Shown here: piece by piece, positions 31,144-37,845 of the stretch
How positions within the stretch are numbered: position 1 is the first letter of the stretch
How the letters are laid out: every line of letters begins with the position of its first letter
Origin: Perkinsela sp. CCAP 1560/9
Taxonomy: Eukaryota; Protista; Euglenozoa: Kinetoplastea
DNA length: 64,000 nucleotides
Direction of reading: 5' to 3'
Assembly (NCBI GenBank): GCA_965644495.1
Contig: CBFFSA010000007.1
Coordinates: forward strand, 434,001 to 498,000
The notes under the pieces: generated by a model
The model's database searches: none
Told to the model about the DNA's origin: nothing
Seen by the model: the letters and a program-made list of their open reading frames with translations, nothing else
Program-made: the position numbers and the translations under genes

Positions 31144-32680
31144 GCTAGCATTGTTGGCTCCTCAAGTTTGATGTTCATGCGTTCGTTGGCGCAGAGATAC
31201 AGCCCTTGATGCGACAGCCGATATCATCGGCTCAATCCGTAATGACGGATGTCGCACCAAGTATATTAATCATGCAGTTGTACTGCAGAGATTAGCCCTG
31301 GACAAGTGAGCACGCCCAAAACGTGCTGCTTGTTCGGGTTTGCCGTTTCACTGAAAGCTGTGCACCTCCCACGTAGGGTTCTCGCGGTGCTGATATATTA
31401 CGAAGCTTCCCCTGATAGCGCGCTGGGCCATTGTTTCCCTACATTCGGAGGCAAGGCTCTTGTCTCCTCCGAAAAGAGAGTTCAACGCGCGAGTGGTGGA
31501 GTTAAGCTTTCCTCTTGCACCCACCTCAAAAACCAGTAAAAATGTAGATGGATTGATCAGCTTTCTCTGATTATAGATAAACGAATACTTTTGAACCTTC
31601 CGCTCATGAGCATCAGCAAAGTTTTCTTCCCATGGTGAGGTCAACTCGATGATGAATTCCGCCCCATTGTGCAACTTTAACCACCCGTCTGGTCTCAATT
31701 CAGTTTCTTGCGAGAGCCAGGCGGGAGGGTTTCTGTATTGTTGCAAGTCGAAGTGTAAGTGGGCCGTGTGGGGAGATGAGGACATGGCTTCCGCGAGTGT
31801 CGAAAGGGTGAGGTCGTGCCGGTAGTTGTATCTCCCTTGGCTTAGAGCTACCGAGCATCCCGTTAATATATGACGTGGTGTCTGCATGGCTTCTCGGCAA
31901 ATTGGGCACTTTGCATCCGTGTGGGTGGATATACCCCATCGACGGAGGGACGCACGGGTCGGTAGAGGGGTTTGAGTCAATACGGATGCCGCGAAACGCG
32001 AGAGAGAAGGGCTCTTGATATTGCATAGGGCAGACGCAAACTCTTTTGCTAACTCGCCTTCAGTGGCCATTTGAAACCATTGGCAGGCGATCGTAGTTCG
32101 TCGCTGCACAGACGCGGCGAGGAAACGCTCGTACTCGTCATTTACTGTCTGCCGTAACCGTCTTGGGCCGTCACGATTCTCGTAGAGCTGAACAGCTGGG
32201 CGGATGCGTCCGGATGATCTCCTGTTTTGCTCGGTGGCAATCCTCTGTCTCAAAGCTTGCAAAACGGCGGGGTCGCGCGATCGATTCATTTGGGAAATAG
32301 CTGACGCAGTGCACTGCAGCCACAGCTTCGTTATACTGGTTATGCTCCATCCGCGTTCTGAGTAAATGAGCTCGCTTGTGGCGGTTTTCGCAATATTGAG
32401 CCACTTCCGTATACGTGTTGTCACTAGTTTTTGTAGACGGAGAACGAAGTTAAAGGTTAATCCAGGATTTACTGTGAGAACATAGCGCAGTCTGGAAATA
32501 ATAGCATTATTATAAATATATATGGTTATATCCACAGTCGTGCTGGTTGTTCGTGCGCACTTTCCGATATGTTATCCAACCACGTTCTCAATTTCGAGCG
32601 CAGAGATGAAAATAGAGTTTTGCCTTGCTGTGCTCCGGGTGCGAGAGTCATCCCCAAGAAGCAGCTACCCTTATCACATG

Positions 32681-33471
32681 CAGTAGTGTTCAGCCTCTTT
32701 TACCCCCCCCTACAGGTCTTGTAATTTGTCCGATTTTGGAAATATTTTGTATGGGACTGTTTTTTGACCCAATCGTTCCGAATCCGAGGTCCTTTTCACT
32801 CGTGGACACCTGTATCATACCTAAACCGGAAAAAAACTGCAAAAAAAAGTCGATGTTTTTTTCACAGTGCATTTTTTTAAAATTGGTACATTTATTTGTG
32901 ATTCATGACGAAGAGGCACCGCCCCCTGTGTTTACCTTCCTCCCGCGTGCGCCCCGAAATGCGCACGGCACTCGCAATCGATTACGAGCGACTTAAGTCC
33001 TATAAGGCAGTCGCAAAACTCCAGCGATGTCTCGCCGCGTAAAGGATGTGCTGAAACCCCGAAACAGGACTCAACTTCGGGAGTCCATCATTGAACGTTT
33101 CGTTTTTTTCCGAAGATCAACCGGAAACGTTTAAGAATATCTTCCGGAACTATCGTAAACATTTACTTTTGGTCAAGGAGGCCAAAGGGCATATGACTAA
33201 ATACTAGAGATTACTTTGTACTCTTTTTCCACGTCTTCTGACCTACTTTACTACTCATATTCATCCGGAAAATTCGAAAAAATGCCCCGAAAAAAGTCGC
33301 AATTAGCTTTTTTGACCCCTACCTGGCTAGGGGGGGGTAGGGGGTCGCTCGAGTGAAAAGGACCTCGGATTCGGAACGATTGGGTCGAAAAACGGTGTTA
33401 TACCAAATATTTCCAAAATTGGACAAAATACAAGACCTGTAGGGAGGGGTAAAAGAGGCTAAACACCACTG
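32681..33471. mobile_element. MITE family A copy inserted in the retroelement RT
   Basis: TIRs match 4004-4750. Removing the element and one target-site dinucleotide restores the RT frame IPHI-CDKGSCFLG. One TA flank is mutated to TG. Confidence 0.9.
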
Positions 33472-33768
33472 TATGTGAGGAATCGGTTGTCCACAAGCCA
33501 TAATACGGGGGCGATGGGTCATATATCCTCCCTCATGTACTGCCATGTGTTGCGTCCGACATTTCTTGACATTTAGCTGAAGACCCATGATGCCTAATGC
33601 CTTTATCAGGGCATTTGTTACTTGTTGCATTTCTCCTGGGGTATTGGTCATAATTGTTACATCGTCTGCGAATGCTTTGAGGAAAGATTGAGTGTCATTC
33701 CACACTATGCCAAGTAGTTTTATCATGCACTTATAGTGCAGAGATTTACTCATCATGTCCTTATCCCG

Positions 33769-34310
33769 CATACGACGGGTGGATCATGTGAGGTTTCGTC
33801 CTCGCCGGAGGTGTGCGGGTGCGGAGAGCTGGCGTCCCAGGTGCAGAGAGCTCGGTTGTCATGTGCAGGTGCAGAGAGCCGGATGCGTAATCCCCATATT
33901 ACAGTTTCGGGGGCAATCCGGGTGCAGAGAGCTGCGACAGAGCCGAGGTGCGGAGAGCTGGGCGACCGCCAGGTGCAGAGAGCCGAGCCTCGTCGGCGGA
34001 GGACACGTCTAGTGGTCCTCAAGGGAGGCCACCGTGACGCATGGCCCTCTCGGAGAGGAAAAAGACAAGTCGAAAAAAAGCCGAGAGGGGGAAGCACACT
34101 CACTCCAGGGGAGTGAGTCGGGGAGGGGTGAAGTGGTGAAAGCGCGTCCCCTGCTTCAGCGACAAGAGGGACAGTTCCGACCTTAGTGCCGGCCGGCAAC
34201 GGGCATAAAAATACAGTAAGAGTATGCCCGTTGCCGGGGAAAGAAAGGATTAACTCAACAAGGTACAGAAACTAGTTGGGTAGAGTTGATCTTAGGTAGC
34301 GAAAGACTAC
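33769..34310 (+). ncRNA. Unknown highly structured insertion with six GTGCRGAGAG motifs (candidate ncRNA or non-autonomous element)
   Basis: Nested helices visible by eye. G-U pairs favour the + strand. It replaces the RT3-RT4 portion of the host retroelement. Confidence 0.6.
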
Positions 34311-37300
34311 TTCTATGGTGCTCCAGAAGCTCACACAAAGCCTGTGTATGCTCGATCGTTCCGTTGACCCCAGGTAAGAACCCCTGCTGTATAGTTGTAT
34401 CTATGATTCCCGTGGATGTGACATGCTCAAGAATTCGATGGCTAATTATCGTGTGGAATAGTTTACCCAGACAGCTTGTGAGGCAAATTAGACGCCAGTT
34501 CCCAAGATTGCTGGTTTCCCCATCCTTATGTGTCAGAAGAGTGGCTCCTCGTTTCCAGCTATCGGGGCACGTACCGAAGGTAAGGAGGTCGTTGAAAGCC
34601 TGTGCTATGGAAGGATATAGAGCTGCGCAGCGTTTTAAGACAGCGTTCCCAATGGTATCTGCGCCAGGGGCAGCGGATGGTCTCTTTGAAGCTATCGCCG
34701 CCTCGATGGCACTGCAATCGATCTCAGCCCAATACATGTCTGACTGTACCTGAGGTCCCAAGAGCTCTGTGGGAGGAAGTCCATAGTTTTCTTGTGGGGT
34801 TTGCATGCTATTCCGAAAATAGGTTGTGATTTCCTCCTAGGAGCAGTCCGGGTACTTGCCCCACCGCTGATCTGCCTCTTTCGTGTGCGCATCAAGGCAT
34901 TCCCCAGCTGCAGTCCCAGGATTTCTTTGGAATCGCACTTTAGCCCAGCGCTTGGCGATCTCCTCTCGTTGTGTCCTGCTTTCTTCTGCATAGACTTTTA
35001 GCAGCTTACTAGCTTCTTTTATTTCTCCTTTTAAGCGGTCGCGTTCCACTCGTCCATGGCTGTATCGCAGTGATATTTTGAGCCGGCGGATATGGCCCTC
35101 CATTTGCTTGGCTGAACGGTCGGCTGCAAGGGGTCGAGATCTACGTTGGGCGCGTCCTGTGTGGGTGCGTAGGCGAAAGCCTTCCACTGCGTCAGCCTTG
35201 CACGCAGTCTCGTAGGCACTCACCGCAATACTTGCAGTCAGAAGTTCTGCCTGGTGTTTAGCTTCATCTGCGGTAGTTGCAGGGCGCAGAAATTTCGCGC
35301 ATCGCTCTGCTGCGCGTCTTTCGGTCTGCTTCCACTGATCGCTAGAAAAGTGAATCATAATTCTTCCTCCTTCAATGGACTTCAGAGTTCTTAGGAGGGA
35401 TGCGCTCGTCTCTTCCTCGTTGTGCGTCCTCTGTGACGACATTATTCTGTTTGCGTTGCGTGATCGACGGCTCGGTGCACTGGATTGGAGCATTGACGGT
35501 TGTAGGGGTGGCTGTGGGGGTGATTGGGGGCTGGGCAAAGTGGTGTCTGGGCCATCTGCCACGCCGCGTGTGGTAGAAGTTTCGTTCGCGTGTGCAGGTG
35601 TTCGGCTTTCCGTCCGTGCTGTGCGGAGGTGCGCTTCCTCTGTTACGTTTGTTGCCGGTACTCTGTGTTCCGTCTCTGTTCGGTTTCCACTGTTCAGCGC
35701 AGTACTTGGACGAGTATTACCATGATCATTTCGGGTTTGCGCAGTCTCTGGCTGTGCCTGGGTCACATGTTCAGTTGAGGGATTCGATTCGTCAGGGTGG
35801 ATCTGCATGTACGACCCGGAGATAAGGCTACGCAGGCCCCGGAGCCCGGCCCACACGAGTGAGTTGACCACAGGTCGGACTGAGGAGGTGGACACACCAT
35901 CCTTGCAGCACTTGTGCTTGCAAGTAGTTTTATCAAAGCATTTGGGTAAGCACGGGCGGAGCTGGGTTTGTGGTTCTGGAGCACGCGTGTTGTTCTCTAT
36001 CGCCGGAGGTGTGCCGACGGAAAGAGGGACTGATAAGGGTGGGGTTTCATTTCTTTCAGCGGACGAGGGTAACAGGTTCCTCTATAGCAGGTCAGCCACC
36101 GGTTTCACGATACCTCGCTGGAGCTTTGGTGACCACAGGTCGTTTTATCGCGGCAGGAGTGTTTACATGGCTGCTCTACGGGAGTTTTTACAAGGGCTGC
36201 GGTGGGTGTAGCTTGTTTCCCGTTCCCTGTCGTCAATGCTGTAGGTTCTGTCGCATGAGTTAGGGATATAGGGCCAGAATGGAGCACTGCTCGCTCAGGG
36301 ATTAGGGACTCATGTGTGGCGTCTCGAGGCGGCGTTAGCGGCACACCAATTTTGCAGCATACGTGCTTGCAATGGGCTTTGTCCCGGCAGATGTTTTTAC
36401 AAGGGCGATGTGTGGGCAGGATCGAGGCCATTGGGGAGGACTCGTCCGGGACTGTACTTGTGGGCTCGGGCATTAAATCCAGGGTGTCCGCTCGCTCTAG
36501 GCCGGGCGCTGGCTGAGGGGAAGGGAGGGGCGCGAGATCGTTTGAAAGCGGGATGCCATCGTTTGTGACTTTACAACATAGGTGTTTGCAGGTAGCTTTG
36601 TTGCTGCAATGGTGCGCACATGGTCTCGTCCTTCGCAGAGTAGCACCGGGATCCGCGTTCGTGTTGTGCCGCGTCCGTATGCGATAAGACTCGTCGTAAT
36701 CCACTTCTTTGAGCTTCCAATATGAGCCTTCTTCCTCGGTTGACTCGCGTTGAATAATCAAAATTTCATATCCCGATAATGCAATCATGCTCCGCCCTCC
36801 CAACTTCTTAATGGCGCGACCTAGAGCTCCTGCCGAGGAATATGCGCCAGTGAGGTTCATGTCTTTGTCCGCGTATGCCGATGTCCAACTGGTGTGGCGG
36901 AAAGTCCGTTGTTCTCCATCTACTTCACGGAATTTGATGTAATCGCAACATCTTTGGTCCATAACGTCACTTATGTTGCATGTTTGGATCAGAATTCCAT
37001 CAGGTCGCTTGGCGCCTGATTTTAAGGTTCGTGCAATAGAAAGTTCTGCCGTGAGTTCTGCATTAAAAGCCCCCTTTTCCGTTAGAAACTGTGCTGCTGC
37101 GTGGATGTGGGGAAAGTAGGCCCATTTGCTCGCTTCAGGGTGTCTAATGCGAATTGGCACTGCACTAGTGCGTGTCGGGCGAAAGCTTTCTTCGTGAAAT
37201 GGCTCTGCGCTGGCAGATCCTCGAGGGGTGGATGGACATGCCCCTTGTGGGGATAGCAGTTATACGGTAACTAAAAAAAGTGTTCAAATGTTTTAACAAA

Positions 37301-37524: not shown

Positions 37525-37845
37525 TTACCAAACCAAAATGACCGAAACGTAATACTTCGTAAGTCCCCTCTTCGCCCTAATTACTGCCCTCAAACGAGGG
37601 GGTATGCTACGGACAAGAGGAAGACATGCACTCGGAGGAAGGTCTGCCCATGCTTTTTGGGCGCGTTCCCAAAGCTCCAACATTCGTACGGGAGGATCTG
37701 GATGATCCGCAGTTGACTTTTTGAGCTCGCCCCATAGGTGCTCTACGGGATTTAAATTGGGAGACTTCGAGGGCCAGTCTAGGACACACAATTCTTGTAA
37801 ACGAAGGAATTCCCGGGCCTACTCGTGTGCTTTGGATCATTATGG
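37525..37845 (-). mobile_element. Tc1-type transposase C-terminal fragment
   Basis: NDPKHTS (frameshifted), then WPSKSPNLNPVEHLW and AVIRAKRGLTKY. Confidence 0.85.

What the first reader, a model, noticed from the sequence alone, without database searches (positions are those of the whole stretch)
34248..34310. 18-nt stretch antisense to the euglenozoan spliced-leader core at the end of the structured insert
Seen: the minus strand of 34256-34273 reads AGTTTCTGTACCTTGTTG. Established: the 3' end of kinetoplastid/diplonemid SL exons is AGTTTCTGTACTTTATTG, a 16/18 match. It is not followed by a GT donor, so this is not an intact SL RNA gene. On the + strand (the folded strand) it is SL-complementary, and one of the two differences becomes a G-U pair. 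It sits inside a hairpin closed by GATTAACTC/GAGTTGATC and is followed by a small GTAG-CGAAAGA-CTAC hairpin. Inference, three options: an RNA that base-pairs with SL RNA or SL-capped mRNAs (as primer, target guide or translation hijack), a remnant of an SL-gene-targeting retroelement junction, or a retro-copied trans-spliced 5' end.
Basis: partly seen in the sequence, partly recalled or inferred. Interest (0 to 1): 0.85.

Follow-up and report, generated by a model that had tools for sequence, protein, structure and literature searches.

The report
Relic spliced leader heading a retroposon copy
The 18 letters are the end of this protist's own spliced leader, copied back into DNA at the front of a short, recently active retroposon that landed inside another retrotransposon's reverse-transcriptase gene; it is a fossil of RNA processing, not an antisense regulator.

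Summary
The minus strand of 34256-34273 matches 18/18 the 3' end of this organism's own spliced-leader (SL) exon. I read that exon from two tandem SL RNA genes beside a 5S rRNA gene.

The 18-mer occurs about 619 times in the 21-Mb assembly (control 2). Only 8 sites continue into the SL intron, and only 2 have the SL-gene upstream region.

In the window it is the 5' head of a 557-nt non-coding retroposon, 33717-34273 on the minus strand. This family has at least 46 copies, and the window copy differs at 1 of 530 positions from its nearest relative. It sits in sense orientation in the RT gene of a dead R2-like LINE. The 3' junction is clean. The 5' junction has 41 nt of unique filler and has lost 99 RT codons.

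Family copies carry 0-36 nt of SL, always ending exactly at the exon boundary. Three recurrent junctions occur, including 13 copies joined right after a pyrimidine-tract AG; the window's junction is unique. The best reading is that the retroposon RNA was trans-spliced and then reverse-transcribed.

The antisense-pairing and SL-gene-junction options are not. The hairpins it described use the unique filler and occur in no other copy.

This scan had already met SL-headed retrocopies elsewhere in this genome. Dispersed SL fragments are published for Perkinsela.

The parts
34256..34273 (-). Relic spliced leader: the last 18 nt (nt 21-38) of the organism's 38-nt SL exon, forming the 5' head of the retroposon copy
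   Evidence: Exact match to the SL exon end in the SL RNA genes of L034. The 18-mer has 619 genomic sites against 2 for the control. Other family copies carry 0-36 nt of SL at the same place.
33717..34255 (-). Body of a 557-nt non-autonomous, non-coding retroposon (SINE-like; the 557 nt include the SL head)
   Evidence: At least 46 copies at 85-100% identity. The true 3' end was defined by where the flanks diverge. The 148-codon ORF has no ATG and is broken in diverged subfamilies. No Rfam family matches. The nearest copy, on C14, differs at 1 of 530 positions.
33717..33745 (-). 3' tail of the retroposon with a short hairpin (GCACT-ATA-AGTGC), ending in GATAAAAC; presumed recognition site for the partner LINE's RT
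   Evidence: It is conserved in all copies up to the point where the flanks diverge. A homologous hairpin with compensatory changes lies at the host LINE's 3' end.
34274..34314 (.).
   Evidence: Unique in the genome. Host RT homology to a relative ends at 34315. Part of it resembles an inverted copy of the adjacent retroposon head; this is by eye and was not tested.
34315..37160 (-). 5' part of the host element, a dead R2-like (restriction-like endonuclease type) LINE: ORF1-like ORFs and the N-terminal part of RT up to the residues before motif A
   Evidence: ORFs are listed. It aligns over 181 residues with an intact relative, L065.
31262..33716 (-). 3' part of the host LINE: RT from just before the FADD box, a zf-RVT/CCHC region, a restriction-endonuclease-like C-terminus, and a 3' UTR ending in the tail hairpin at 31270-31289
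   Evidence: Pfam RVT_1 and zf-RVT match. Homology to the relative resumes one residue after the retroposon's 3' end, and 99 residues (297 nt, RT motifs A and B) are missing.

Best explanation
The 18-mer is a relic spliced leader. A short non-coding retroposon is transcribed as part of a longer RNA and receives the organism's capped 38-nt SL by trans-splicing. The reverse transcriptase of an R2-like LINE, which recognises the shared 3' hairpin tail, then copies it into DNA at a nicked target. Reverse transcription runs from the 3' tail toward the cap, so each new copy carries as much of the SL as the enzyme reached. In this copy that was 18 nt.

This copy landed in sense orientation inside the RT gene of a LINE of the partner type, at a TACTTGG site like the one that flanks that LINE's own 3' end. 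The 3' junction is precise. The untidy 5' joining deleted 297 bp of the host RT and left 41 nt of filler.

Shown: the identity of the motif with the SL exon end, the element's limits, strand and copy number, the variable SL head, the junction types and the host damage. Inferred: trans-splicing as the source of the head, and the LINE partnership. No RNA data could be obtained.
For: - **SL RNA genes.** In L034 the exon ends in the 18-mer, followed by GTATGAGAAGC. There are two tandem copies next to a 5S rRNA gene.
- **Genome counts.** The 18-mer occurs 619 times against 2 for the control. SL plus intron start occurs 8 times, and the SL-gene upstream region only 2 times. At least 32 nt of SL occurs 364 times.
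- **The element.** The insert is a repeat with at least 46 copies. Its 3' end is fixed and its flanks diverge beyond it. Copies L024 and L025 keep the 3' end but lack the 5' part.
- **SL heads in the family.** Heads run from 0 to 36 nt and always end at the exon boundary. Near-identical copies (98-99%) have heads of 17, 21, 26, 29 and 30 nt, so head length is set at each insertion.
- **Junction types.** SL|GTAC occurs 71 times. SL|TTMATC, directly after the stretch TTTTTCCTTAG, occurs 13 times, in both body variants and in a 90% subfamily. Four SL|TAC cases were read among the loci in hand.
- **Coding LINE families.** They show SL, then a 25-45-nt leader, then ATG, as a trans-spliced mRNA would.
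- **Partner LINE.** The tail hairpin is shared with the host LINE's 3' UTR with compensatory changes, and both are followed by TACTTGG.
- **Host damage.** The host RT lacks 99 residues exactly at the insert.
- **Literature.** In Perkinsela, an L1Tc-like transcript carries an SL, hundreds of SL fragments are dispersed in the genome, and non-AG acceptors are common (PMC5601477).
Against: - Trans-splicing of this element is therefore inferred from DNA only.
- The main junction, SL|GTAC, is not behind an AG in the copies read. It needs a non-AG acceptor, the relic's own TG, which is documented for Perkinsela but not for this organism.
- The window's own junction, SL|AGTTAATCC, is unique. It needs either a TT acceptor or a later 13-nt deletion.
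- SL heads cluster at 26-30 nt rather than spreading evenly, which simple 5' truncation does not explain.
- The tree of copies is a star and cannot prove that the AG-joined class arose repeatedly.
Confidence: 0.78

Rival explanations
1. The SL head is added during reverse transcription, not by trans-splicing. On reaching the 5' end of the retroposon RNA, the RT jumps to an SL RNA or to another SL-capped mRNA and copies part of it.
For: Some heads are preceded by extra partial SL pieces (L008, L009, L010, L031, L046), which look like repeated template jumps. The element start GTAC shares GTA with the SL intron start, a possible microhomology. R2-type RTs are known for end-to-end template jumping (established knowledge).
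Against: The junction always falls at the exact exon end, and the SL intron is never co-copied beyond the ambiguous GTA. 13 copies are joined immediately after a pyrimidine tract plus AG inside the element, which is a splice-acceptor signature and not an RNA end. Coding LINEs show SL plus a short leader plus ATG. Known jumps go to 3' ends of templates, not to internal exon boundaries.
Confidence: 0.1
2. The head is a piece of an SL RNA gene. Either the retroposon arose from an SL RNA gene, or the locus is the junction of an SL-gene-specific element (SLACS/CZAR/CRE-like), or master copies sit behind an SL promoter and are co-transcribed with the exon.
For: The modal head begins at SL nt 11-12, which is the SLACS/CRE insertion point in trypanosomatid SL genes (recalled knowledge). 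The host is an RLE-type LINE, the superfamily that holds CRE/SLACS. The junction SL|GTA mimics the exon-intron boundary.
Against: There is no similarity between the SL intron and the retroposon beyond GT. Only two loci in the assembly have the SL-gene upstream region, and both are ordinary SL genes, so none of the 71 SL|GTAC sites has it. Flanks upstream of the heads are all different. Head lengths range from 0 to 36 nt. In SLACS-type junctions, SL nt 12-39 lies 3' of the element, not at its 5' end. The homologue search gave no named CRE-clade relative.
Confidence: 0.06
3. The + strand is the functional strand. An RNA carrying the SL complement pairs with SL RNA or SL-capped mRNAs, as a guide, primer or decoy.
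For: The + strand of 34240-34315 folds somewhat better than shuffles (z -2.1). With about 600 relic SLs in both orientations, some antisense-SL transcripts must arise from read-through transcription (inference).
Against: Every orientation mark puts the element's RNA on the minus strand: the SL sense, the tail shared with LINE 3' UTRs, and the 5' truncations. The hairpins depend on filler found nowhere else. The SL piece varies from 0 to 36 nt among copies, so it is not a conserved functional module. No Rfam match was found.
Confidence: 0.03

Closest known systems
Relict spliced leaders on retrogenes of dinoflagellates (recycled processed cDNAs; PMC6050394, PMC5585692)
   Same: An SL exon encoded in DNA at the 5' end of a retro-copied unit, ending at the exon boundary. 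It is used as proof that the unit passed through a trans-spliced RNA. Partial and tandem relics occur in both.
   Different: Here the organism is a euglenozoan with a 38-nt kinetoplastid-type SL. The tagged units are mainly retrotransposons and a non-coding retroposon rather than cellular genes. The main junction appears to reuse the relic's own 3' end rather than an internal AG.
Dispersed 'SL RNA gene fragments' of Perkinsela sp. CCAP 1560/4 (Tanifuji et al. 2017, PMC5601477, Supplementary Note 1.3)
   Same: One or two intact SL genes against more than 500 SL pieces, some next to retrotransposons. An L1Tc-like transcript bears an SL. Reverse transcription is proposed as the source.
   Different: That paper reads them as decaying SL genes, retro-copied introns and a SLACS-like arrangement. 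Here the SL exon pieces are heads of retroposed units with variable 5' extent. The SL sequence also differs from the published prokinetoplastid core (TTACAGTTTCTGTACTT, PMC7859406), so this is not that strain.
SLACS / CZAR / CRE1-2, SL-gene-specific LINEs of trypanosomatids
   Same: RLE-type non-LTR elements physically linked to SL sequence.
   Different: Those insert into SL genes between exon nt 11 and 12 and stay within SL arrays. This SL piece lies at the element's own 5' end, outside any SL gene, and the copies are dispersed.
Non-autonomous partners of LINEs that share the LINE's 3' tail (tail-sharing SINE/LINE pairs; internally deleted R2 derivatives; RIME/NARTc/SIDER in kinetoplastids)
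   Same: A short non-coding unit with the partner's 3' recognition hairpin, 5' truncations, and the same target motif as the LINE.
   Different: No Pol III promoter and no Pr77 5' hallmark. The 5' end is an SL relic instead.

Membership tests
Intact SL RNA gene | SL exon followed by a GT donor and the SL intron | tested here: not met
   In the window the 18-mer is followed by AGTTAATCC. Real genes continue with GTATGAGAAGC.
Intact SL RNA gene | Full 38-nt exon preceded by the SL-gene upstream region, in a tandem array | tested here: not met
   Only 18 nt of the exon are present. The upstream region occurs at just 2 loci, both on C1 near 661 kb.
Relict-SL retrocopy (RNA-mediated copy of a trans-spliced RNA) | SL in sense orientation at the 5' end of the copied unit, ending exactly at the exon's 3' boundary | tested here: met
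   every head ends at ...CCTTGTTG, and the unit's 3' tail lies on the same strand.
Relict-SL retrocopy (RNA-mediated copy of a trans-spliced RNA) | Marks of target-primed reverse transcription: fixed 3' end, variable 5' truncation, dispersed copies | tested here: met
   The 3' end is identical in about 30 copies with unrelated flanks. SL heads run 0-36 nt, and deeper truncations occur in L024 and L025.
Relict-SL retrocopy (RNA-mediated copy of a trans-spliced RNA) | SL joined at a splice-acceptor-like site of the unit | tested here: inconclusive
   Met for 13 copies joined after TTTTTCCTTAG. The main SL|GTAC junction (71 sites) and the window's SL|AG junction lack an upstream AG, so non-AG use must be assumed.
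Relict-SL retrocopy (RNA-mediated copy of a trans-spliced RNA) | The SL-joined RNA exists | not testable with these tools
SL-gene-specific LINE junction (SLACS/CZAR/CRE) | Element inserted within the SL exon (nt 11/12) of an SL gene, with SL gene sequence on both sides | tested here: not met
   The flanks are host RT, filler and retroposon body. There is no SL intron or upstream region.
Tail-sharing non-autonomous partner of an RLE-type LINE | 3' end homologous to a LINE 3' UTR end | tested here: met
   The host LINE at 31270-31289 has the same hairpin with compensatory changes and an identical surrounding motif.
Tail-sharing non-autonomous partner of an RLE-type LINE | No coding capacity of its own | tested here: met
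   The ORF lacks an ATG and is broken in diverged subfamilies.
Structured antisense RNA against the SL | Structure and SL complement conserved among copies on the + strand | tested here: not met
   The hairpin partner sequence is unique. The SL piece varies from 0 to 36 nt.

The most novel reading that the evidence does not exclude
The relic SL is a working part of the element. In a genome without gene-specific promoters, this retroposon family and its R2-like partners would obtain a capped, defined 5' end only by trans-splicing. The retro-copied, pyrimidine-rich SL remnant ending in TG would then serve as the splice acceptor for the next round, so a fresh SL replaces the old one at exactly the same junction. 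That would explain three things. The SL|GTAC junction persists across subfamilies 85-100% alike. Head length differs between near-identical copies and can reach 36 nt. No copy carries shared sequence upstream of the head. It would be a promoter-less retrotransposon that renews its own 5' end.
Probability: 0.3. Interest if true: 0.6.

Novelty: new member of a known kind. Interest (0 to 1): 0.35.

Why it matters
For this locus the result is mostly clarifying. An apparent SL-antisense RNA turns out to be an ordinary insertion scar with an informative tag.

The tag has practical uses. It gives the organism's SL sequence without RNA data. It also marks about 600 sequences as RNA-derived and fixes their strand and 5' ends.

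The retroposon family is young: the window copy is 1 difference in 530 nt from a sister copy. It also disables other retrotransposons.

More broadly, kinetoplastid-type genomes may hold relict-SL retrocopies on the scale known from dinoflagellates. The 'SL gene fragments' reported for Perkinsela may be the same thing. If the relic also acts as the next acceptor, that would be a distinct way for a retrotransposon to live in a genome with polycistronic transcription.

Tried and rejected
- **Known RNA families.** Rfam at gathering threshold over the window and at E<=1 over 33600-34400 gave nothing relevant. No ribozyme, tRNA-like or snRNA-like part was found in the retroposon.
- **Descent from the SL RNA gene.** Alignment of the SL intron with the retroposon's 5' region shows no similarity beyond GT. 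Rejected.
- **Coding function.** The 148-codon sense ORF has no ATG and is interrupted in diverged subfamilies. Rejected.
- **Conserved hairpins around the motif.** The partner sequence is unique and the fold is weakly significant. Rejected.
- **Empty site of the host LINE.** The only close relative (C64, L062) is collinear for just 554 nt and ends before the site. A 50%-identical relative, L065, had to serve as the reference instead.
- **LINE clade.** The search for homologous proteins returned only unnamed metagenomic RTs, so CRE-clade membership remains open.
- **Tree of copies.** It is star-like and cannot decide whether the AG-joined class arose more than once.
- **Literature search for the exact SL string.** No paper holds it.
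- **Organism identity.** Only indirect evidence: a kinetoplastid-type SL gene linked to 5S, and RPS5 closest to trypanosomatid ribosome chains. Earlier notes call the genome Perkinsela-like; I did not test that. Its SL differs from the published prokinetoplastid core.
- **Sampling limit.** Only about 60 SL sites were read in context; the rest are counts.

Full report
**The observation**

It is the only match in the window even at three mismatches. A 16/18 match to a remembered consensus would be expected about 0.003 times in 128 kb.

That statistic is overtaken by a direct finding. The same 18 letters occur about 619 times in the 21-Mb assembly, against 2 for the reversed control. In locus L034 they form the end of a 38-nt exon followed by GTATGAGAAGC, the kinetoplastid-type SL intron start. 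That locus holds two tandem units 297 bp apart, next to a 5S rRNA gene. The motif is therefore an exact copy of the last 18 nt of this organism's own spliced leader.

RPS5 in the window is closest to trypanosomatid ribosome chains. Earlier notes of the scan call the genome Perkinsela-like; I did not test that. The SL differs from the published prokinetoplastid core (PMC7859406).

**What the insert is**

The stretch is a dispersed repeat with at least 46 matches. Aligning the copies with their flanks shows that the unit ends, in minus-strand sense, at ...GCATGATAAAAC (window 33717). Beyond that point the flanks are unrelated. At the other end the repeat stops at 34273, the first base of the SL piece. 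The unit is thus 33717-34273, 557 nt.

Three marks put its RNA on the minus strand:
- The SL is in sense orientation.
- Copies L024 and L025 keep the 3' end and lack the 5' part.
- The terminal hairpin recurs, with compensatory changes, at the end of the 3' UTR of the surrounding LINE at 31270-31289, on the strand of that LINE's ORFs.

The unit is non-coding. Its 148-codon ORF lacks an ATG and is broken in diverged subfamilies. It matches no Rfam family. The window copy differs at one position in 530 from a copy on contig 14, so the insertion is recent.

**The host**

The ORFs on the minus strand from 37160 down to 31348 belong to a non-LTR retrotransposon. It has RVT_1, zf-RVT/CCHC and a restriction-endonuclease-like C-terminus, which is R2-like in layout.

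I compared it with an intact relative that is open over 922 codons (L065). The host RT aligns up to 34315 and resumes one residue after the retroposon's 3' end at 33716. Ninety-nine residues of the relative, including RT motifs A and B, have no counterpart in the host.

The 41 nt between 34274 and 34314 occur nowhere else in the genome. A clean 3' junction combined with an untidy 5' junction (element truncation, filler and target deletion) is the usual outcome of target-primed reverse transcription. Both the retroposon here and the host LINE's own 3' end are followed by TACTTGG. That fits one integration machinery with a site preference.

**The SL head across the family**

In about 50 SL sites read in context, every SL piece ends at the exon boundary. 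In this family the SL part runs from 0 to 36 nt, with a mode at 26-30 nt. Copies 98-99% identical in body have heads of 17, 21, 26, 29 and 30 nt. Head length is therefore set at each insertion, and the window's 18 nt is one draw from that distribution.

The junction types are:
- SL|GTAC, 71 sites in the genome.
- SL|TAC, four cases among the loci read.
- SL|TTMATC, 13 sites. This removes the 15 nt GTACTTTTTCCTTAG, so the SL is joined directly behind a pyrimidine tract and an AG. It occurs on both body variants and in a 90% subfamily.
- SL|AGTTAATCC, the window's own junction, which is unique.

Coding LINE families in the same loci show SL, then a 25-45-nt leader, then ATG, as a trans-spliced mRNA would. 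Of the 619 sites, only 8 continue into the SL intron. Only the two genes on contig 1 have the SL-gene upstream region.

**Mechanism**

The best-supported reading is that the retroposon RNA was trans-spliced, then copied into DNA from its 3' tail toward the cap by the RT of a tail-sharing R2-like LINE. The SL relic marks how far the cDNA reached.

The rivals fare worse:
- Template jumping of the RT onto SL RNA could explain the occasional extra partial SL pieces upstream of some heads. It does not explain the exact exon boundary, the AG-acceptor junctions, or the absence of intron sequence.
- Descent from, or insertion into, an SL gene is contradicted by the lack of intron similarity, the diverse upstream flanks, and the absence of any SL promoter region at the SL|GTAC sites.
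- The antisense-RNA idea fails on strand. The hairpins involve the unique filler, and the fold is weakly significant (z -2.1).

**What stays open**

- There is no RNA evidence.
- The main junction has no AG upstream. If a fresh SL is added there each round, as heads of 31 and 36 nt in a sister subfamily suggest, the acceptor must be the relic's own terminal TG. Perkinsela uses AG at only 27% of sites and TG at 26% (PMC5601477), so this is plausible but untested here.
- The clustering of heads at SL nt 9-13 is unexplained.

**Relation to what is known**

Relict SLs on retro-copied genes are well described in dinoflagellates (PMC6050394, PMC5585692). For Perkinsela, Tanifuji et al. reported one intact SL gene, more than 500 SL fragments, some beside retrotransposons, and an SL-bearing L1Tc-like transcript. 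They interpreted these as decaying SL genes and retro-copied introns, reminiscent of SLACS.

This scan had already reached the same reading for another copy, in an LRR gene (s1-686834), and noted a genomic SL fused to non-SL sequence (s1-698624).

The locus is therefore a new example of a known kind. The family-level pattern, and the possible reuse of the relic as the next acceptor, are the parts worth following up.

Noticed in passing
genome-wide counts; examples L041, L043, L044, L053: Among SL heads that reach the 5' end, 154 read T before CTTTAACG while 58 read the gene's A. None of the T copies listed is an SL RNA gene. This may be a reverse-transcription signature at a modified cap-4 nucleotide, or a non-templated addition.
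   Followed up: partly
G000:C1:2477631-2492909 and small contigs C41, C42, C44; L012, L013, L041: LINE copies with full SL heads recur at a period of about 5.1 kb. In several copies read in other loci the head is directly preceded by poly(A). Together these suggest head-to-tail concatemers of SL-capped, polyadenylated retrocopies.
   Followed up: no
G000 sites: Eight loci have the SL exon plus intron start, but only two have the SL-gene upstream region. The other six may be retro-copied unspliced SL RNA or broken genes.
   Followed up: partly
L008, L009, L010, L031, L046: Extra partial or degenerate SL pieces lie immediately upstream of some SL heads, as tandem relics.
   Followed up: no
L066:262-5000 (ENA assembly ERZ24900291, contig ctg1929l): A full-length R2-like LINE, 99% identical to L065. 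It has a 29-nt SL head, a short leader, ORF1 of 652 aa and ORF2 of 817 aa. It sits in a leucine-rich-repeat gene, and its 3' tail differs from the one shared by the window's LINE and retroposon.
   Followed up: partly
window 33717-33716 junction and 31262: The retroposon and the host LINE's own 3' end are each followed by the same 7 nt, TACTTGG, which suggests a shared target preference.
   Followed up: partly
window 37525-37791 (-): This ORF reads like the C-terminal part of a Tc1/mariner-type transposase, just upstream of the LINE. I judged this by eye and did not test it.
   Followed up: no
L034:2225-2343: A 5S rRNA gene (99 bits) lies adjacent to the two SL RNA genes, the linkage known from bodonids and other euglenozoans.
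   Followed up: yes
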